Positions 1,797-63,730 of a DNA stretch of 64,000 bases are shown here, piece by piece. The notes beneath the pieces were generated by a model. It was not told the origin of the DNA and searched no databases. It saw only the letters and a list, made by a program, of their open reading frames with translations. A program made the translations under genes and the position numbers. Origin of the DNA: Mytilus californianus (lineage: Eukaryota); NCBI RefSeq assembly GCF_021869535.1, contig NW_026262743.1, forward strand, positions 1-64,000. The letters run 5' to 3'. Every line of letters starts with the position of its first letter. The stretch's first letter is position 1.

Positions 1797-1994
1797 CATG
1801 TAAACTGAGAGGAATAAAGCCTGACATCAAACTGAAATTGCTGATTTACCCCATGGAGGCAAACGCATTCGGATAATGACTAAATCAAATATGTATACAT
1901 GTAAACTGAGAGGAATAAAGCCTGACATCAAACTGAAATTGCTGATTTACCCTATGGAGGCAAACGCTTTCGGATAATGACTAAATCAAATATG
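1797..1994. repeat. Two-copy tandem duplication, 101-bp period
   Basis: CATGTAAACTGAGAGGAATAAAGCC...CAAATATG occurs at 1797 and 1898, with two substitutions. Confidence 0.95.
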
Positions 1995-2220
1995 CTTGAA
2001 TTCATTATTTCTAAGTTCTACCACAACAGAGGTCTTTGAACATGCACTGATAAACCTTGACTCGGAATAGGATATCAGGGTTGGAGTAACCTCCCTTTGT
2101 TTAATTCTGTTTATTATTTAACTTATATTTCTCTATTGTAAACACAATCTTACTTTCGGGGAAGGTTACATGTGCCTACCGTTCTCTCTTATTTCCTATG
2201 AGTCAATAATCCCCGTCCAT

Positions 2221-2465
2221 AGAATGTGTCCATAGTACACGGATGCCCCACTCGCACTATCATTTTCTATGTTCAGTGGACCGTGGAATTAGGGTCAAAA
2301 ATCTAATTTGGTCTTTAAATGAGAAAGATCATATCATAACATGTGTACTTAGTTTCAAGTTGATTGGACTTCAAGTTCATCAAAAACTACATTGACCAAA
2401 AACAGACGAACGGACGCACATACCAGAAAACATAATGGCCTCTAATATCGTAGGTGGGGCATAAA
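2221..2465. mobile_element. Short interspersed HINE-like repeat (internally deleted)
   Basis: AGAATGTGTCCATAGTACACGGATGCCC ... GACGAACGGACG ... GGTGGGGCATAAA resembles an abundant mussel repeat as recalled. Family assignment is from memory. Confidence 0.45.
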
Positions 2466-2955
2466 CATGTTTACAAAGGAGCAGATTGCAGATTAACTAT
2501 ATAGTTAATAGGTGCAAAAAAGTGCAATGATTTGTTTTCAATTCTTACTTGATTACAAAACCATAATACTATCAATATTGTTCTTTCTACAAAAGGACAA
2601 ACAATCGTCCTGAATATGCATGAAATATTAAAACATGACGTTCAGCAACCAACAATTATTCATACACTGAGGAACATACATTTGTGTATTCCGTGTGAAC
2701 ATGACGTTGTCTCCTTTTTTTTTTTTTTTAGGGGGGGGGGGGGTCTATTATTTCTTCATAAATAGGCACAAATATTTCTCTTGCACCTTAAATTCTCCGT
2801 TTGATTAATACAAAAATGGGCACCGATATATTTCTAATTTCTAATTGACTAGATGAATTAAAGACACCTTGAGACATCTATAACACCTTTTTTTTTTTAC
2901 CTATACACGTATTTTGCTGTGTTGGTAAACGTTTTCAGAGATTCATGAAAACTTC

Positions 2956-5900
2956 TAACGAGCTTGAAACAAAGCTAGTTTATTCAAGAAAAAATACAAA
3001 TAAGGAGAATTTGTATTATTGCTAATGAGACAACCGAAGTGCATGTATGCAACTATAGTCAACACCACAGCCTTCAACATTGAGGAAAATCCATACTGTA
3101 TATATAGAGGTTTATAGAACATAAATGTATGTTTGGCGCTTTCAAACAGTATGAAACATGTACATTCATAAAAACAAAAAAAGTTTAATGAGTTTGTTAA
3201 CTAGTGGGACATAATTGTTCAATGAAAGGGTATTAATGGTTTTATATCGAGAACATGTCAATGTTTTGCACGTTTAAGTAAATATACATTTTCGAGATTC
3301 ATTTAATGCTTCAATCGGACTTAAGTACGTGTTTAAAATTGCCTAATGTCTTAAATTTCCAATTTGTGTTAATATTTTATGAATAGAAATCGATTTTCTT
3401 TACACTATTTTTTTAACAAAGTCTGCTGGACGTCTTAGGTTATAGTATCAAGTCCTTTGCTTGAGATGGACGGCTGTTTAACTGTGCGGAATGTATAAAT
3501 ACGCGGCCACGTTAGATCGGAACTTGGACGTAACATCACAAGCTTCATGTATATGGTGTCACTCTCTTTGCATGCGTAAGAACCATTGAGGGGTTGGTTG
3601 ACATGCTGGTGAACTGTTGCTAGATAAAATGTCTATCCTTATCAATACTTTAGTGCTCCAATTCTTAACATTCACACAGATCAGCCCTTTCAACATATTC
3701 AGGATATCGTATCCTTTACATGCATGACATATTTGACACTGGACATAAAACCATCAACTATCAATCCTAGTATTGCTGCAGCGAACAGATCAAGTGAAAA
3801 AAATAATGAAGGTTGGTCCTTAACGATTTCATTAGCACATACAAATTGTATATTAATCACATATACATATATCTGTATACAGTCCTCTGTTCTCGCATCT
3901 TTCTATATATCCATCACAGTAGCTCTGGTAAAAAAAAACATTTGAATTCGTGTATTCTTTTGAATGGTTTCTATTGAATTATGACAGGTTCTGGTTTATG
4001 ACAGATATCGATGACTATTTTAAAATTGAATAAATTTCCTGAAAGTGTGAAGTTTAAAATCAAATTTGTCCTTTTTAAATTTGAACATTTGTTTTTACCA
4101 GAGAACAGAAGTCGAATGAAGAAATACAAAAAGCACAGCGTTAAGATATTTTTGTATCGGAAGTTTGCTTTTACTATCTTTGCTGAACCACGATTTTATG
4201 ACGGAAAGACTCCGGAACATCTCGTAATTGGTCACATCAACAAATTGAAGTGAGGGGGATTGGGGGACTGTAAGCAAAAGCAAAGTGTTTCAAAATAGGA
4301 TATATATATACCTTCACCATCTGATAAGAATAAACATATTTTATTTTATATTTTAGTGATGTGTCTGTAAGTATAATGACAGAAGTAAACTCAATAGATA
4401 TAAGAAGATGTGGTACGAGTACCAATGAGACAACTCTCCATCCAAGTCACAATTTGTAAAAGTAAACCATAGTAAGTCAAAGTACCGTAACCGTTTTCAT
4501 ACGGAACTTTGGCCCACACCGAACAGCAAGCTATAAAAGGCCAAAAAACTAGTGTAAAATCATTCAAACGGGAAAACCAACGGTTTAATCTATATAAAAA
4601 AAAAACGAGCAACACTTATGAACCACAACAACAAACGACAACAACTGAACATTGACCGCAGGTTCCTGTTTTAGGACAGGTGCAGACAAATGAAGCGGGT
4701 TTAAATGTTTAAATAGGTACCAGCCTTCACCCTTACCTGGAACAAGCCTGTTTAATATGAATCGGGAACATATTAGTATTTGGACAACTTCTGCTTATAT
4801 ACTCATATTGCCGACGATACGTGTATGGTCCGGGTAATTAACACGATCAACGTTGATAAGGTGTACAACATAAAGTTAAGAATTTCTCAAAAATTAAATT
4901 TTGACACAATCAATCATATTGTAGCCATTGCTACATGATTAATTTAATAATGTGAATATTACTTGGAATAAATATTATAGTTAACTATATGTTAAGTGGC
5001 CATTATCAATTTTCCATAAGAATCGCAATCTGTCGACTTTGGAAAATTACATTTCATTTAGAAAAATTAAAGTTCATTCAAGAAATATCTAAATGAACTG
5101 TAAAAAAGAAAATTTTGTAACTTACTTGAACTTTGTTCTTTGAACACTACAGATTTCTCCTTTGTTTAAATTTTATTTGGTGTTTGAATTTGTTTTAAAT
5201 AAATTATCATATCTAAACGTTTTAGCTCATTTGATAATTTTTTCATGACCCCATATATTCCCATCTTACAATGACAGTAAGTTAATATTAATAGGAGCAA
5301 GAATACATCAGTTTCAAGAAAAAAAGTAGAAATAACAATTGAAAAACTAAGAAAACAGAAAAAAAACATGCCCCTCCTGCACGAGATGTCATTTAAGGGC
5401 GAAAATCGGCAGTATAAAGCAATTTATTTTAGTGACTAAGCAAATAAAAGATAACAGATACAATAACAGTCTGACAATATGTTAGACAATGATTTGTGCT
5501 GTGTGTGCCTGCAAAAGAAGCATAATTATGGTCTTGTTAAAATTGAGAATTGAAATGGGGAATATGTCACAGTGACAAACAAGCCGTCCAAAGAGCAGAC
5601 AACAGCAGATGACCATATACGCATATGGTCCTTCTACTCATATGGTCCGGACACCGTATAAGATTTCGTGAGCCCATAGCAAGAGTAAAGGGTGAACGGA
5701 ATCCCTGCTCAAATAAAGCAAACTGGCAAACGCATTGGCTAGTAGTCAAGTGAACATCTATAACAGACATTTATACATAGGTTGAGAAACTCTTCTTACA
5801 AAATATAAATGAATGGACACACAAACGCTAGAATGGGTAGTTCTTTTTTAGTAATATGATGTAGCAATGGGATGCAATCTTATCCCAACTATATATCCAG

Positions 5901-42200: not shown

Positions 42201-42720
42201 GCTTTATGTTTTATCTTAAACTACAAAAATGAGGTTAGTTGAAATTATCTTTTGATTACTTTATGTATATCTAAACAAATTTTGTATAAGAAAGAAGATA
42301 AAATTAATTGCAGAAGTCAAAGTAAAACTCGTAAGTCCAATATTGATTCGATTACAAGTTTTATTAAAATTCATCAAAGATACCAGGTTAAATAATGTGG
42401 TACGCCTGCGCGTTTCGTCTATAAAATTATCGTCAGCGGCGCTAGATTTAAACTAGAATACGAAATTGAAGAGCATTTCAAAGCGAAAATTCCTAAAAGT
42501 TGTTCCAAGTACAGTAAAGGCTATCTATACATTGGGTAGAATAAAAATCTGTTAGTAATTCAACATTTAATAAATAGTCAACTAACAGAAAAGTAAAAAT
42601 GTCAAAGATATTTCATGTCAACAACAAAAAATACTACTAGGCTGGTGATAACCGCAGGGGTTTAACGTCAACAAGGAGTGGGATCGACACTGTGTGGATA
42701 AATCTGTTATAGAATTTGGA
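39300..42720 (-). repeat. Old, highly diverged repeat region with several inactivated hammerhead/retrozyme remnants
   Basis: Hammerhead-like remnants at ~39325-39370, ~40879-40928, ~41406-41430 and 42401-42442. Recurring blocks ATGAGGT(C/T)AGTTGAA at ~39818, 40727, 42229, and GGCTGGTGATA..GGGG-like blocks at ~41120 and ~42640. Confidence 0.6.
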
Positions 42721-43085
42721 GCAATGTATTTCCATCAGCTTCTTATTGTAAGTTACAGTATACTATGGTCAAGTTTTGCTTTGCGACTGGGTTGTCGGTT
42801 CAAATTTATTAATTATGCTTTACCATTGAGTATCGTCTGTTTTTAATGAACAGTGTACCTTAGGGGTATAAAGAGAGATATAAAGAGATCAAGACTGCAG
42901 TACAATTGTGTAATGTATTGTTATGTATCGTCGTGCGAATCTTATGGTATTATATGTTCACCTTTAATATGTATATGTATATATATATATATATATATAG
43001 AAGTCTATAAAAAGGACCAACCAGCAAATTTACTATGTACCGGATCGTCTAGAATAGACGATACTGTGCAGATAAGGAAAAAAAT

Positions 43086-43291
43086 TATATAAGTCTAGAG
43101 ATTTGCACAACGATACTAATATAAGATGGTATTATACGAAGATGTTGTTAATAAATCGTGTTGACAATGTTAAAATAATTGACACCGAAGAAGGCTATTT
43201 GTTAAGCCGAAATATTTGTCAACACGATTTATTAACAACATCTTCGTATAATACCATCTTATATTAGTATCGTTGTGCAAATCTCTAGACT

Positions 43292-43297
<6 letters not shown>
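43086..43297. mobile_element. Perfect palindrome/MITE: 82-bp arms, 48-nt spacer, TA-flanked
   Basis: 43086-43167 is the exact reverse complement of 43216-43297 (TATATAAGTCTAGAGATTTGCACAACG...GTTGACAA). Confidence 0.92.
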
Positions 43298-43323
<26 letters not shown>

Positions 43324-43658
43324 CCCCTCTACCCTCTATGATTGCATTGGATAAAAACCGCAATTTGTATACGTGTGCATGCAAAACAAATTTCTTGTTA
43401 GAGGGGTCTAAATACAGCACAAACAACATTTTCCAAAAGACCAAAAAAGTGAAAAGGTATATTTTAACAAAACGCATTTGACTAACATGTCGAACAACAA
43501 ATGTTCTTAAATCCTGTTGACTGCCATTGGCGATTGCCAAATAAACGGATCACAAGGTGTAATAAATGATCTTAACTATCAATTTAATACCAATAAGAAA
43601 ACAATAAACTTGCGGCGAAGATGGTATACCGCAAACAAAGGTGCAAAGATTTTTTGTT

Positions 43659-43700
43659 ACCATATCCGGATTTCGACAATTAATGTCTCTTCAGTGATGT
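43659..43700 (-). ncRNA. Type I hammerhead ribozyme, unit 1 (core intact, stem I shortened)
   Basis: Minus strand: ACAUCA CUGAAGA GACA UUAAU UGUC GAAA U CCGG A UA / UGGUAAC. Predicted cut between 43663 and 43662. Confidence 0.8.
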
Positions 43701-44713
43701 TAGGAATCGAAACGGTTATTGGAAGGCCACATAATTTACCTCAATTTAGGATAGACTCTTGAATTTTGAGGAGTCAAAATATGATGAACGGATCATATAA
43801 ACCCGAAGGCGAATATAATACAAGCTCAAACGAAAAAATATAAACAAGTCTAAATTAAACAACGTTCAAACCTATGATTGCGTTGGATAAAAACCGCAAT
43901 TTTTATACGTGTGCATGCAAAACAAATTTCTTGTTACAGGGGTCTAAATACAGCACAAACAACATTTCCAAAAGACCAAAAAAGTGAAAAAGTATAGTTT
44001 AACGAAACGCATTTGACTTACAGGTCGAACAACAAATGTTCTTAAATCCTGCTGACTGCCATTGGCGATTGCCAAATAAACGGATCACAAGGTGTAATAA
44101 ATGGATCTTAACTATAAATTTAATACCAAAAAGAAAACAATAAACTTGCGTCGAAGATGGTATACCGCAAACAAAGGTGCAAAGATTTGTTGTACACCAT
44201 ATCGGGATTCAATGATGTTAGGAATCGAAACGGTTATTGGAAGGCCACTTAATTTACCTCAATTCAGGATAGACTCTTGAATTTTGAGGAGTTAAAATAG
44301 GATGAACGGATCATATAAACCCGAAGGCAAATATAATACAATCCCAAACGAAAAAATATAAACAAGTCTAAATTGAAAACAACGTTCAAACCTATGATTG
44401 CGTTGGATAAAAACCACAATTTTTATACGTGTGCATGCAAAACAAATTTCTTGTTAGAGGGGTCTAAATACAGCACAAACAACATTTCCAAAAGACCGAA
44501 AAAGTGAAAAAGTATATTTTAACAAAACGCATTTGACTAACAGGTCGAACATCAAATGTTCTTAAATCCTGCTGACTGCTATTGGCGATTGCCAAATAAA
44601 TGGATCACAAGGTGTAATAAATGGATCTTAATTACAAATTTAATACCAAAAAGAAAACAATAAACTTGCGGCGAAGATGGTATACCGCAAACAAAGGTGC
44701 AAAGATTTTTTGT

Positions 44714-44757
44714 ACACCATATCTCGATTTCGACAATTAATGTCTCTTCAGTGATGT
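44714..44757 (-). ncRNA. Type I hammerhead ribozyme, unit 3 (non-palindromic loop III variant)
   Basis: Minus strand: ACAUCA CUGAAGA GACA UUAAU UGUC GAAA U CGAG A UA / UGGUGU. Predicted cut between 44720 and 44719. Confidence 0.85.
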
Positions 44758-45159
44758 TAGGAATCGAAACGGTTATTGGAAGGCCACATAATTTACCTCA
44801 ATATAGAATAGACTCTTGAATTTTGAGGAGTCAAAATAGGATGAACGGATCATATAAACCCGAAGGCAAATATAATACAAGCCCAATAGAAAAAATTTAA
44901 ACAAGTCTAAATTGAAAACAACGTTCAAAGCTATGATTGCGTTGGATAAAAACCGCAATTTTTTATACGTGTGCATGCAAAACTATTTTTTTGTTAGAGA
45001 GGTCTAAATACAGCACAAACAACATTTTCCAAAAGACCAAAAAAGTGAAAAAGTATATTTTAACAAAACGCATTTGACTAACAGGTCGAACAACAAATGT
45101 TCTTAAATCCTGCTGACTGCCATTGGCGATTGCCAAATAAAGGTGCAAAGATTTTTTGT

Positions 45160-45203
45160 ACACCATATCCGGATTTCGACAATTAATGTCTCTTCAGTGA
45201 TGT
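45160..45203 (-). ncRNA. Type I hammerhead ribozyme, unit 4 (fully intact)
   Basis: Minus strand: ACAUCA CUGAAGA GACA UUAAU UGUC GAAA U CCGG A UA / UGGUGU. All core nucleotides present; stem I is 6 bp with one G-U. Predicted cut between 45166 and 45165. Confidence 0.9.
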
Positions 45204-45253
45204 TAGGAATCTAAACGGTTATTGGAAGGCCACATAATTTACCTCAATTTAGG

Positions 45254-45280
<27 letters not shown>
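45254..45280. repeat. (TA)n microsatellite (others at ~42975-42999 and ~43292-43317)
   Basis: Direct inspection. Confidence 0.95.
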
Positions 45281-45285
<5 letters not shown>

Positions 45286-48200
45286 ACTGAATAATAGACA
45301 ACGATATATCTTACGGGGCTATGGATCATAAAATTATGATACAGCACACTACAAAATATAATATATAACAAGTCTAAAAGGGTACAACATCACCAAAAAA
45401 TAATAAAATCATGAACAAATTTTAGATATTTCGGATATCTAATATCCTTTATCAGTAGATTTAAAATGAATCTATCTTGACATGTGGTAGTCAAACTGAA
45501 ATAAAAATCGTGAACGCTATACAAATAATCAATTACCAATACGCTGGAATTTTTTTTTCAATATTGATGTTTGGGAGGAGGAATAAATTTCTTAAAACTG
45601 TAAAAGTCCAAAACGGAAGCCTGAGTTACTGGAAACAAGTGATGGTAGGGAAAATGAATGACACATTCTATCTATGACTCTTACAGTTTTAAGAAATTTA
45701 CAAGGCATATTGACTGGTCTAGTTAACTTAGGACAAGTTTATATCACTCGGGTCGTCCCAGGACACAAGTCTAGCTAATATAAAAAATAGTCTTGATCCT
45801 AAGACTGTTTTTATGACTTCCGAATAAGATATCTTTTGAACAGGTTCTCTTTTGAAATAAATAAGGGGAAAGTTAATTTGGAAAGAAGTTAACTTTGAAA
45901 TAAGTCTTTCACACTTTATTAGTGTTTTAATGACCTAACCGATTGATGCAGACCCGTTAATTAGTTAACTTTTGGTCTTGTCTAATCCATTTTTAGTATC
46001 TCAGTGTATATAGATAGACTTCCATTCTCAATTTTATTTTGCGAACTAGAAATTGAAGTATGTGTCTATCAAGGCATACCATATCCACTAGCAGTCTTTG
46101 TGTTTATCTTTGTATATTTAGTTACTTTTTTAGGTTATATCATTGCAACAGCGAACAATCTGAATAGCTTAGTGAAATTTCAATATAGCAGATTAAACTT
46201 TAAAAATGTAGGTGTTCGTGTACATCAGCTGTTAAACAAGGATATACAATGTGTTGACATTTAAAGACAAACTGGTAATCGAAAACAACAAAAATCACTT
46301 TAGTTTTGAAAACTCTTTTAAATACATTAAAAAGATATAACATTCAGAGTGATATATATTTATACACATCAATGATTGTAACATTGTGAAAAAAATAGAT
46401 GTGTTTGTGTAATAATACAAGTAAATGTACATTAAAGATCTAAAAAGTTACCTAATTATGACAAAAATGGGCTTTTTTCAGATTTCTTGTTTGGCTATTA
46501 TTTGTGTGTGTATTACATACAGAGAACGTTGCGTTATTGAGGAATACACAGAGTAATCAAAGTAAACATAGTAAGTAACGAATTTGTGCAATTTATATCA
46601 AAAACAGGTTTGAATACTTGACTGAAAAAAAATAAACTGGTTCTTCTCAAACCACAATAAAACATAATGGTAAAATGATGATAAAATGTCTCGATGATGA
46701 CGTTGTATGATAAGTTTTTTGTCGTTTTGGTTTGTATTGTGTACAATAGAAAGTGTCTAATTTGGTGAAATTTATTCCAGATTGTTCCTCTACAGAACTG
46801 ATTTTAGTAACTTATGAATAACTTATAGAAATTGTTCAACTATTCGACTTGTTCCAAAGAGGAATTCTATTTTTTTATGTTCCAAATGCATTTAAATATC
46901 TTGCATAATTACAGTCAGCAAGTATTTTTAATCTGTGTGCCCAATTGAAATCCAATTCCGGGAGAATCTTATATTTCTACTAAGTGAATCAGTTTCCCCC
47001 TGTATAATTCAGTATCCTTTATCCCAAAGAAATCAATCTGGTCGTTTCCGAGTGTAATCAAAACAATCCCTGTAGAAAACAAAATTGAGTGTGCTGAAAT
47101 GGACCAGCTATGTGTTACTTTTTACCTCTTTGTTACACAGGGAACATCTCATCGTTTGTTTTTTTTTTTTTTTGCCCTATACGGAACCAATTTGAAACTA
47201 CGACTTTATATTAAAAATAATAAGAAGATGTGGAATGAGTGTCATAAAACAATTCTCCATCCAAGTCACAATTTATAAAAAGTTATCAATTATAGGTCAA
47301 AGCACGGCTTTCAACACCGAGCCTTGGCTCACACCGACCAGGAAGCTAAAAAGAGTCCCAAAATGACTAGTGTAAAACAATTCAAACAGGAAAACCAACA
47401 ATCTAATCTATATAAAAACGAGAAACACCTATAAGCCACACCAACAAACGACAACCACTGAACAATAGACTCCTGACTTACGACACGTGCATACAAATGC
47501 AGTGGGTTTAAACGTTCCAACAGGTGCAAACTTTCAACCGAACCTGAGACAGTAGTGTAATATTGCAACATAAAAAGACACACTAGAGAATATCAATTGA
47601 AATGGCTTTAACTCGATCAAAAAGACATTTAAACAAAATCAAGTAAACATACAACGAACGAATAGGTTTGATCTATGACACAATATAAATATAATATTAA
47701 AACGTAGGTACCTATTTAATATAGATGTTACAGGTAGTAATAAAAAAGATGTAAAAAGAGTGTCAATAAGACAACTTTTACCTGGGACGAAATGGCGTTA
47801 AAAAAAACAACGTTCTACACGGTTTAATTTTAATATAATAATTTTGTTGTTAGGAGTACGGAAGTAAACACTTTTTACAACATTAATAAATTTGATGTTC
47901 AGAGTACGAGTACAACTTTTTGCTCGACCAAATTCATAACGATAATTAAGTTTAAAGTCCAAACGACAACCGATCATTTGGCCATTAAAAAATATGCAGG
48001 GACTATATACCCTTGCTCCCGCGTATAAGGTATTTTTAAATTCATGGAAGACCCCAGGCTTATAATTTGATACGCCAGTGGCGGGTTTTGTTCATATAAG
48101 ACTAACCCCATATTAGGTATATAGAATATATGAGTAAATTGAACTACAACTTTTCCCCTTGTTCTTAACTAAGAAATATGGAGTTGTGAGATGATATTCA

Positions 48201-63456: not shown

Positions 63457-63730
63457 CACTAGATGTGCATTTCGACAGTACATGTCCCTTTAGTGAATCT
63501 CGAGGGCAAAATATTTGAAAATTCAAAGCAAATTAAAAAGATGAAGAGCTATAAACCAAAAAGGACAAAAAGATCAAAGTCGTGCAAGGAATCAGAGCTT
63601 TGCATGACATCAAATTGTATAAACACAACATCCGTATTCTTGTGCTAGTACCGAAGTACTGGCTACTGGGCTGGTGATGCCCTCAGGGACGAACAGTTCT
63701 TCAGCAGAGGCATCGACCCAGTGGTAGTAA
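63457..63730 (-). mobile_element. Solitary decayed retrozyme monomer with mutated hammerhead
   Basis: Minus strand 63499-63457: GAUUCA CUAAAGG GACA UGUAC UGUC GAAA U GCAC A UC UAGUG. Same stem II arms as the 43-45 kb ribozymes, but the core reads CUAAAGG. Body includes GGCTGGTGATGCCCTCAGGG, like 42640. Confidence 0.7.

What the first reader, a model, noticed from the sequence alone, without database searches (positions are those of the whole stretch)
43336..45254. Young tandem array of ~539-bp monomers encoding self-cleaving Type I hammerhead ribozymes (retrozyme-like, possibly an undescribed long-monomer family)
Seen in sequence: the minus strand of units 1, 3 and 4 contains the complete hammerhead core CUGAAGA / stem II GACA(UUAAU)UGUC / GAAA, a 2-bp stem III, an AUA triplet, and stem I ACAUCA:UGGUGU. 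Stem I can extend across a CCUA/ACAAAA internal loop into GAUU:AAUC, a geometry suited to loop I-loop II tertiary contact. There is no ORF. Established knowledge: tandem Type I hammerhead repeats in animals, including mussels, are non-LTR retrozymes that are transcribed, self-cleave to monomers and circularise. As I recall, described metazoan monomers are about 170-400 nt. Inference: this monomer is longer (~539 nt), uses AUA rather than GUC/AUC, and apart from the ribozyme its body shows little resemblance to the other retrozyme remnants here (42380-42720, 63457-63730). It may be a distinct family.
Basis: partly seen in the sequence, partly recalled or inferred. Interest (0 to 1): 0.9.

Follow-up and report, generated by a model that had tools for sequence, protein, structure and literature searches.

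The report
Decayed hammerhead retrozyme array in mussel
This is a worn copy of a very abundant, non-coding mussel jumping element whose ~539-base repeats each carry a self-cutting hammerhead RNA motif; its insertion scars point to copying by a Penelope-like retrotransposon enzyme, so it is a new family of a known class, not a new kind of element.

Summary
Window 43336-45254 is a head-to-tail array of 3.6 units (535, 520, 539 and 324 bp). Its minus strand carries a complete type I hammerhead core in units 1, 3 and 4; unit 2 has lost the core.

The array is not young. Its units are 92.5% alike, against 98-99.4% in other arrays of the family, and only unit 4 keeps the family's consensus ribozyme.

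The family is large: the genome holds 12,244 exact copies of the 25-nt core and 3,047 exact 3' ends. It is distinct from the published Mytilus retrozyme Mg353, which is also here (10,262 hits). The two ribozymes share one architecture and differ by five compensatory pair changes.

Copies have a fixed 3' end (…TTTAGACTTGTWTATAT) followed by (TA)n, variable 5' truncations, and a 35-nt partial-unit tail. This is a Penelope-like insertion pattern. A resident Penelope-like element with a 911-aa ORF shares the terminal motif, and fragments of it lie next to this array.

Self-cleavage and circular RNA remain inferred. Rfam scores the motif below threshold, and RNA-seq shows only low, two-strand coverage.

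The monomer length lies inside the published range of 51-972 bp. Verdict: a new member of a known kind. This scan reached the same reading for this family on other windows.

The parts
43336..45254 (-). Whole array: 3.6 units of the ~539-nt hammerhead repeat. The sense (RNA) strand is the window's minus strand.
43336..43871 (-). Unit 1 (535 bp), 94.8% identical to the family consensus.
43872..44391 (-). Unit 2 (520 bp). A 19-nt deletion removed the hammerhead core; the relic lies around 44195-44220.
44392..44930 (-). Unit 3 (539 bp), used as the query for the family searches.
44931..45254 (-). Unit 4. It is 5'-truncated at unit position ~121, where it abuts (TA)n, and has a ~95-nt internal deletion at 45141.
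43657..43700 (-). Hammerhead of unit 1. The core is intact, but stem I is cut to 4 bp (3' strand UGGUAA). Predicted cleavage 43663|43662.
44714..44757 (-). Hammerhead of unit 3. The core is intact, but the helix III loop is CGAG instead of the palindromic CCGG, so the dimer helix is broken. Predicted cleavage 44720|44719.
45160..45203 (-). Hammerhead of unit 4, identical to the family consensus. Rfam RF00163 scores it 22.4 bits (gathering score 34) over the full model. Predicted cleavage 45166|45165.
45254..45280 (.). (TA)n flanking the 5'-truncated end of the element.
43292..43323 (.). (TA)n on the 3' side of the array, shared with the neighbouring Penelope-like element fragment.
43324..43335 (+). 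Filler between the (TA)n and the array. It contains ACCCCTCTACC, an 11-nt inverted snippet of the same family (unit positions 467-477). The canonical 35-nt tail of the family is missing here.
42991..43302 (.). Inverted pair of 3'-end fragments of the Penelope-like element with the 911-aa ORF. The arms (43086-43167 and 43216-43297) are 100% complementary. Each fragment ends in TAGACTT + (TA)n.

Best explanation
The array is a middle-aged, partly broken genomic copy of a high-copy, non-coding, non-autonomous retroelement of a Mytilus-type mussel. It belongs to the metazoan non-LTR retrozyme kind.

Each ~539-nt unit encodes, on the window's minus strand, a type I hammerhead. It has a 6-bp stem I and a 4-bp stem II with a 5-nt loop. 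Helix III is only 2 bp and is capped by a palindromic CCGG loop, so efficient cutting should need two ribozymes paired through an 8-bp AUCCGGAU duplex.

Shown here: the family spreads through an RNA of hammerhead polarity. Copies have one fixed 3' end inside the unit (…GUUUUCAAUUUAGACUUGUWUAUAU) followed by (TA)n, randomly truncated 5' ends that often join (TA)n through TA microhomology, and a 35-nt partial unit as a tail.

Inferred: array transcripts self-cleave after GAUA, the 539-nt monomers are ligated into circles, and a Penelope-like RT/GIY-YIG endonuclease nicks (TA)n. The enzyme primes on the UAUAU site and copies a circular or uncleaved multimeric template, giving n+ unit arrays in a fixed phase.

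The most likely enzyme donor is the resident Penelope-like element with a 911-aa ORF. It shares the terminal module CGTTGT-N8-9-TAGACTT-R-(TA)n.
For: Ribozyme:
- All core nucleotides are present (C3-A9, G12-A14, A15.1:U16.1, H17 = A).
- Rfam Hammerhead_1 aligns end to end: 22.4 bits, E = 0.0012 on 101 nt.
- Against a genomic Mg353-type ribozyme, whose family is reported to self-cleave (PMC7229834), 5 of 12 pairs change on both sides and none is broken. None of 500 shuffles reaches this.
- A cofold of two copies forms the intermolecular AUCCGGAU helix: -36.3 against 2 x -12.2 kcal/mol.

Family size:
- 12,244 exact cores and 3,047 exact 3' ends with a TA tail; controls give 0.

Insertion anatomy:
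- 19 of 19 ends inspected stop at unit position 36 followed by a TA-rich tail, in most cases a (TA)n run.
- 5' ends are scattered over the unit in 19 + 40 insertions. About half abut TA repeats, and most inserts are shorter than one unit.
- Sense polarity equals hammerhead polarity.
- Multi-unit arrays read through the cleavage site, so their templates were uncleaved or religated.

Candidate partner:
- RVT_1 plus a C-terminal GIY-YIG domain, with a CX2-5CxxC-type linker. At least six loci carry the intact 911-aa frame.
- Its 3' end is …CGTTGTGCAAATCTCTAGACTT(A/G)TATA(TA)n.
- The only similarity to the unit is the priming site: 21 nt at 86%.
- On contig C1, 5 of 9 of its 3' ends lie within 2.1 kb of a listed retrozyme 3' end, against 0.07 expected. 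Fragments of it abut this array.

Literature:
- (TA)n targeting and 30-40-bp tail extensions are described for Penelope-like elements (PMC8557442).
- Retrozyme origin from Penelope-like elements has been proposed (PMC7229834; bioRxiv 2026).
Against: - No direct evidence of cleavage or circles.
- In three RNA-seq runs, reads at 90% identity or more cover the array at depth ~10-360 in both orientations. They make up only 0.01-0.02% of reads, below the family's ~0.4% share of the genome.
- No pile of read ends is listed at 44720/19 or 45166/65. Two of the three libraries are oligo-dT, which disfavours circles.
- Rfam is below the gathering score, and nothing appears in a window-wide scan.
- The hammerhead is only slightly better conserved than the body: 0.977 against 0.955, rank 42 of 497 windows. 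Purifying selection on it is therefore not shown.
- The predicted circle is not strongly self-paired: z = -1.2, 56% paired.
- The single-molecule hammerhead fold (-2.1 kcal/mol) is less stable than an alternative fold (-8.1).
- The 911-aa element has no hammerhead core of its own, and its similarity to the unit is limited to ~21-30 nt.
- About 40% of 5' flanks have no TA repeat, so (TA)n may not always be a pre-existing target.
- This window's copy lacks the canonical tail.
Confidence: 0.8

Rival explanations
1. An ordinary dispersed satellite or minisatellite. The hammerhead-like motif is an inert relic, and arrays grow and move by DNA-level processes (unequal crossing-over, segmental duplication), not through RNA.
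For: - The hammerhead is barely better conserved than the rest of the unit.
- Rfam is below threshold.
- RNA coverage is low and on both strands.
- High intra-array identity (98-99.4%) is also what unequal crossing-over gives.
Against: - Thousands of separate insertions share one exact 3' end and tail while their 5' ends are truncated at random. This is a reverse-transcription signature, not a recombination one.
- Five compensatory changes relative to a ribozyme family reported to self-cleave keep every helix intact.
Confidence: 0.1
2. The repeats are the pseudo-LTR or terminal region of an autonomous, hammerhead-bearing Penelope-like element, not an independent non-autonomous element.
For: - Penelope-like elements carry type I hammerheads with a short helix III in their terminal repeats and form tandem and inverted insertions (PMC8557442).
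- A resident 755-aa element has a minimal hammerhead ~90 nt before its (TA)n.
- Fragments of a Penelope-like element adjoin this array.
Against: - The unit has no similarity to the 755-, 855-, 862- or 911-aa elements beyond ~21 nt at the priming site.
- None of 40 randomly sampled insertions continues into an RT ORF.
- There is no ORF in or next to the array.
- Retrozyme 3' ends outnumber the 911-aa element's 3' ends about 10 to 1 (3,047 against 284).
Confidence: 0.05
3. Tandem repeats carried inside a DNA transposon (a non-autonomous Helentron/Helitron or a MITE), as is common for bivalve satellite-like arrays.
For: - Bivalve genomes hold many Helentron-borne arrays (PMC7492417, seen).
- The AT-rich target and flanking TA repeats are compatible with Helitron-like or TA-targeting transposons.
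Against: - No conserved non-repeat termini flank the arrays.
- The repeat itself ends at a fixed internal position on one side and at random positions on the other.
- There are no terminal inverted repeats belonging to the array. The nearby perfect inverted repeat is a pair of Penelope-like 3' ends.
Confidence: 0.02

Closest known systems
Metazoan non-LTR retrozymes, in particular the Mytilus galloprovincialis Mg353 family (Cervera & de la Peña 2020, PMC7229834)
   Same: - Tandem, AT-rich (34% GC), non-coding repeats, each with one type I hammerhead.
- Identical ribozyme architecture: 6-bp stem I, 4-bp stem II with a 5-nt loop, 2-bp helix III with a 4-nt palindromic loop.
- The same host genome holds both families.
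   Different: - The unit is 539 nt, against 350-390 nt.
- The body is unrelated.
- The ribozyme differs at 5 pairs, in loops 2 and 3, at N7 (A instead of U) and at H17 (A instead of C).
- The predicted circle is not highly self-paired.
- Circular RNA and self-cleavage are shown for Mg353 but not for this family.
Penelope-like elements with (TA)n target preference (Neptune, Naiad and Hydra clades; Craig et al. 2021, PMC8557442)
   Same: - Insertion at (TA)n.
- 5' truncation.
- A 30-40-bp tail extension at one end.
- Tandem and inverted composite insertions.
- The terminal TAGACTT-N-(TA)n module is shared with the resident 911-aa element.
   Different: - No RT/EN ORF, so the family is non-autonomous.
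- The repeat unit is not a pseudo-LTR of any element found here.
- It carries a hammerhead, while its candidate partner has no CUGANGA core at all.
Vertebrate non-LTR retrozymes derived from Penelope-like pseudo-LTRs (Li, Clavereau & Pollet 2026, bioRxiv 10.64898/2026.07.22.740005)
   Same: - Tandem hammerhead repeats, consensus length 51-972 bp.
- They co-occur with Penelope-like elements and are proposed to be their non-autonomous derivatives.
   Different: There, similarity extends over the pseudo-LTR. Here it is limited to the ~21-30-nt 3' priming module, and the host is a mollusc.
Dimeric (double) hammerheads of newt satellite 2 and of Penelope-like elements
   Same: Helix III is very short and capped by a palindromic loop, so two ribozymes can pair to form the active structure.
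   Different: Helices I and II are of normal size, unlike the minimal variants of Penelope-like elements. Dimer dependence was not tested.

Membership tests
Hammerhead ribozyme, type I (Rfam RF00163) | Conserved catalytic core: CUGANGA, GAAA, A15.1:U16.1 and a cleavage triplet NUH. | tested here: met
   The core is present in units 1, 3 and 4 and aligns to model positions 1-45.
Hammerhead ribozyme, type I (Rfam RF00163) | Score at or above Rfam's gathering threshold (34 bits). | tested here: not met
   22.4 bits. There is no hit in the window-wide or 4-kb scans.
Hammerhead ribozyme, type I (Rfam RF00163) | Three helices supported by covariation. | tested here: met
   Against a genomic Mg353-type ribozyme, 5 of 12 pairs change on both sides and 95.8% of cells are paired. 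None of 500 shuffles reaches this. Only two lineages were compared. Within the family there are only single substitutions.
Hammerhead ribozyme, type I (Rfam RF00163) | Self-cleavage at the predicted site. | not testable with these tools
   RNA-seq shows no pile of read ends at 44720/19 or 45166/65, but this is a weak test.
Metazoan non-LTR retrozyme | Short tandem repeats of low GC content, each with a type I hammerhead, with no LTRs and no ORF. | tested here: met
   (34% GC). The genome holds arrays of up to at least 24 listed cores in phase.
Metazoan non-LTR retrozyme | Monomer size within the described range. | tested here: met
   539 nt is outside the 170-400 nt of PMC7229834 but inside the 51-972 bp of the 2026 preprint.
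Metazoan non-LTR retrozyme | Expressed as abundant unit-length circular RNA. | tested here: inconclusive
   Low two-strand RNA-seq coverage, mainly from oligo-dT libraries. A tandem reference cannot reveal circle junctions.
Metazoan non-LTR retrozyme | Highly self-paired predicted circular RNA. | tested here: not met
   Circular MFE -107 kcal/mol, z = -1.2 against shuffles, 56% paired.
Penelope-like-element-mobilised (non-autonomous) insertion | Fixed 3' end, 5' truncation, a 30-40-bp tail, and microsatellite (TA)n target bias. | tested here: met
   This window's own copy lacks the tail.
Penelope-like-element-mobilised (non-autonomous) insertion | Shares a 3' recognition sequence with an intact autonomous element in the same genome. 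| tested here: met
   The 911-aa RT + GIY-YIG element ends in …CGTTGT-N9-TAGACTT(A/G)TATA(TA)n. Actual mobilisation was not tested.

The most novel reading that the evidence does not exclude
The retrozyme is a hammerhead-bearing parasite of a Penelope-like element that has no hammerhead of its own. The enzyme primes at a fixed internal UAUAU site on a circular 539-nt RNA and copies it by rolling circle. Like its telomerase relatives, it also lays down the (TA)n tail itself by reiterative copying. Each insertion would then seed a new TA microsatellite that becomes the next target. This would explain the tail-to-tail clustering of retrozyme and Penelope-like 3' ends, and the ~40% of insertions with TA repeats on the 3' side only.
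Probability: 0.15. Interest if true: 0.6.

Novelty: new member of a known kind. Interest (0 to 1): 0.4.

Why it matters
The retrozyme class, its mussel representatives and the proposed link to Penelope-like elements are all published, so the kind is known.

This family adds three things:
- A second, equally abundant mussel retrozyme family with an unrelated body and a ribozyme that covaries with the known one. This gives comparative support for the fold.
- Unusually clear insertion scars: a fixed internal priming site, a (TA)n tail, 5' truncation and a 35-nt tail.
- A concrete candidate autonomous partner with intact ORFs.

Together these make the long-standing hypothesis that Penelope-like elements mobilise animal retrozymes directly testable in one genome. 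This window's copy is a decayed example and is unlikely to be a source of active RNA.

Tried and rejected
- Rfam at gathering thresholds over the window: no hit. At E <= 10 over 4 kb: no hammerhead. The motif surfaced only on a 101-nt stretch, at 22.4 bits.
- Rfam on the two Penelope-like loci: nothing, not even the visible hammerhead of the 755-aa element, so these negatives say little.
- Tandem Repeats Finder cannot see a 539-bp period.
- Single-strand folding of the ribozyme region: z = -0.65, with the hammerhead fold not the MFE.
- Circular fold of the unit: not distinctive.
- BLAST of the unit against four Penelope-like elements and the Mg353-type remnants: only the priming site and the ribozyme match.
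- Enrichment of 5' ends at the cleavage site was looked for. Two of ~59 ends (unit positions 209 and 214) fall there, but that site is also a TA-microhomology site like the other hot spots (~246, ~536, ~121), so nothing can be concluded.
- Read ends near 43664-43667 are explained by unit 1's own indel, not by cleavage.
Intra-array identity was computed from loci already held.
- An exact-string search of the literature for the core found nothing.
- The supplement of PMC7229834 gave the Mg353 sequence but no ribozyme like this one.
- Repbase and Dfam could not be searched, so 'undescribed' is not proven.
Full report
**Observation**

The stretch 43336-45254 is a head-to-tail array. Direct-repeat families with spacings of 518-541 bp cover it. 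The four units (535, 520, 539 and 324 bp) align on the minus strand with 87% mean column identity. Tandem Repeats Finder did not report the array because its longest period is 500.

A pattern scan finds the full type I hammerhead core on the minus strand in units 1, 3 and 4. The sequence reads ACAUCA-CUGAAGA-G-ACA-UUAAU-UGU-C-GAAA-UCCGGAU-A|UGGUGU. Cleavage is predicted at 43663|43662, 44720|44719 and 45166|45165.

Unit 2 has a 19-nt deletion that removes the core, and unit 4 has a ~95-nt internal deletion. No meaningful ORF and no tRNA is present. GC content is about 33%.

**Is the motif a hammerhead?**

Rfam gives nothing at gathering thresholds over the window, and nothing at E <= 10 over 4 kb. 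On a 101-nt stretch, Hammerhead_1 (RF00163) aligns over its whole model at 22.4 bits, E = 0.0012. This is below the gathering score of 34.

Stronger support comes from comparison. The supplement of Cervera & de la Peña 2020 prints the M. galloprovincialis retrozyme Mg353, which is reported there to self-cleave. Its ribozyme has the same architecture: a 6-bp stem I, a 4-bp stem II with a 5-nt loop, and a 2-bp helix III with a 4-nt palindromic loop.

I aligned the window's ribozymes with a genomic Mg353-type copy (L061). All core positions are invariant, and 5 of 12 pairs differ on both sides with none broken by that difference. None of 500 shuffles reaches this. Only two lineages are compared. 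Within the 539-nt family there are only single substitutions.

Helix III is just A:U and U:A, capped by CCGG. AUCCGGAU is an 8-nt palindrome, and a cofold of two copies forms that intermolecular helix (-36.3 against 2 x -12.2 kcal/mol). The single-molecule hammerhead fold is weak, at -2.1 kcal/mol. This fits the dimeric hammerheads known from newt satellite 2 and from Penelope-like elements.

**The family**

The genome (1.65 Gb, 175 contigs) holds 12,244 exact copies of the 25-nt core, typically ~539 bp apart in arrays. The reversed control gives 0. That is at least 6.6 Mb, or about 0.4% of the genome.

The published Mg353 ribozyme 32-mer occurs 10,262 times with up to 2 mismatches, at ~362-369-bp spacing. 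The host is therefore a Mytilus-type mussel that carries both families.

The two 'other remnants' in the window, 42380-42720(-) and 63457-63730(+), are decayed Mg353-type copies. The 539-nt unit shares nothing with them except the ribozyme.

**Insertion anatomy**

This is the main new information. In the orientation of the hammerhead strand, every array or fragment inspected ends at unit position 36, …GTTTTCAATTTAGACTTGTWTATAT, followed by a TA-rich tail, in most cases a (TA)n run (19 of 19 ends). The exact 31-mer of end plus tail occurs 3,047 times, against 0 for the control.

The 5' ends are scattered over the whole unit in 19 and then 40 randomly chosen insertions. Most inserts are shorter than one unit, and a few have three or more units. 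About half of the 5' junctions abut TA repeats. The recurrent 5' positions (~121, ~209-214, ~246, ~460, ~536) are TA-containing sites, which suggests microhomology joining.

A fixed 3' end, 5' truncation, a 35-nt partial unit as a tail and a (TA)n context together make the pattern described for Penelope-like elements (PMC8557442). Two things follow:
- The transposing RNA has hammerhead polarity.
- Multi-unit inserts read through the cleavage site, so their templates were uncleaved multimers or religated circles.

**Candidate autonomous partner**

A GIY-YIG search of the genome finds many Penelope-like ORFs. One family has a 911-aa frame that is intact at six or more loci. It has RVT_1 plus a C-terminal GIY-YIG domain, preceded by a CX2-5CxxC-type motif.

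Its 3' end is …CGTTGTGCAAATCTCTAGACTT(A/G)TATA(TA)n, with an optional ~90-nt extension ending in TTTTATAGACTTC(TA)n. The retrozyme ends in …CGTTGTTTTCAATTTAGACTTGTWTATAT(TA)n. The only BLAST similarity between the unit and this element is that site, 21 nt at 86%.

The element's 3' ends number 284 exact 28-mers. They sit beside retrozyme 3' ends far more often than chance. On contig C1 up to 52.9 Mb, 5 of 9 lie within 2.1 kb of one of the 100 listed retrozyme ends, where 0.07 is expected.

The same holds in this window. The stretch 42991-43302 is an inverted pair of this element's 3' ends, with 82-nt arms that are 100% complementary. It shares the (TA)n at 43292-43323 with the array.

This element has no CUGANGA on either strand. 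A different, 755-aa element carries a minimal hammerhead near its (TA)n.

**Age of this copy**

Units 1-3 are 92.5% alike. Arrays on C121, C154 and C102 are 98-99.4% alike internally. The window units are 94.6-96.3% identical to the family consensus, against a sample median of 96.5%.

Only unit 4's ribozyme equals the consensus. Unit 1 has a shortened stem I, unit 3 has lost the loop palindrome (G207 is kept in 36 of 40 sampled copies), and unit 2 has no core.

The copy also lacks the canonical 35-nt tail. Instead, a 12-nt filler at 43324-43335 contains an 11-nt inverted snippet of the family. 'Young' is therefore not supported.

**RNA**

No indexed RNA run is on record as holding the stretch. 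I laid three raw RNA-seq runs on 42800-45800 at 90% identity or more. The unique flanks have zero depth and the array has depth ~10-360, in both mate orientations. Only 0.01-0.02% of the reads map.

The listed read-end pile-ups are at the window copy's own indels (45141, and 43664-43667), not at 44720/19 or 45166/65. Two of the three libraries are oligo-dT, and a tandem reference cannot reveal circle junctions. The result is neutral: the family is transcribed at some level, and neither cleavage nor circles are shown.

The predicted 538-nt circle is not unusually structured: z = -1.2, 56% paired. The hammerhead is only slightly better conserved than the body: 0.977 against 0.955, rank 42 of 497 windows.

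**Comparison with what is known, and novelty**

Metazoan non-LTR retrozymes were defined in 2020, with mussel repeats of 350-390 bp and Penelope-like elements as the suggested mobilisers (PMC7229834). A 2026 preprint reports consensus lengths of 51-972 bp and homology to Penelope-like pseudo-LTRs in Xenopus.

The 539-nt length is therefore not outside the known range. The core string appears in no searchable paper, but Repbase and Dfam could not be consulted.

Other windows of this scan already hold follow-up reports on the same family with the same reading (s1-302474, s1-318079). I reached mine before reading them.

**Verdict**

This is a genuine hammerhead retrozyme array and a new family of a known kind. 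This particular copy is old and damaged. The family-level insertion signature and the named candidate partner are the useful results. Interest is moderate.

Noticed in passing
window 42380-42720 (-) and 63457-63730 (+): These are decayed copies of the published M. galloprovincialis retrozyme Mg353. The hammerhead relic at 42401-42436(-) reads CTGACGA…CGAAACGCGCAGGCGTA. The intact Mg353 ribozyme 32-mer occurs 10,262 times in this genome (up to 2 mismatches) at ~365-bp spacing.
   Followed up: partly
L045 (G000:C2:37739000-37748000), ORF 1900-4632 +; also L046 and L047: A Penelope-like element with an intact 911-aa RT + C-terminal GIY-YIG ORF has no CUGANGA hammerhead core on either strand. Craig et al. 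2021 report canonical hammerheads as universal in Penelope-like elements with a C-terminal endonuclease. Its clade was not determined.
   Followed up: partly
L044 (G000:C1:54235000-54244000), 5060-5200; tandem copies at G000:C110:55838761-55861102: A second Penelope-like family (755-aa ORF, in 3,927-bp tandem copies) carries a minimal hammerhead, CCUGAUGACGGUGCCCUAGGCACCGAAACAUGUC, about 90 nt before a (TA)n. Its 3' end also contains AGACTT.
   Followed up: no
window 43086-43297: A perfect 82-nt inverted repeat with a 48-nt spacer scored as a microRNA precursor (MIR8643, 40.6 bits, below threshold). It is in fact a head-to-head pair of 3' ends of the 911-aa Penelope-like element.
   Followed up: yes
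window 45281-45340; L008 1312-1380 and 1400-1465: A ~55-nt mini-element (…ATGATCCATMGCCCYGTAAGAT…TTCAGTCATTTTA) recurs flanked by (TA)n on both sides and in both orientations. It is probably a heavily 5'-truncated copy of another (TA)n-targeting element.
   Followed up: no
window 45330-45400 (-), and the 5' flanks in L006, L008 and L011: Several unrelated sequences end in TTTAGAC(TT)… directly before (TA)n. A UAGACUU-(UA)n terminal module therefore seems to be shared by multiple element families in this genome.
   Followed up: partly
window 43324-43335: The array's 3' side lacks the family's canonical 35-nt tail. It has a filler that contains an 11-nt inverted snippet of the same family (unit positions 467-477). 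This is unexplained and may be a template switch.
   Followed up: partly
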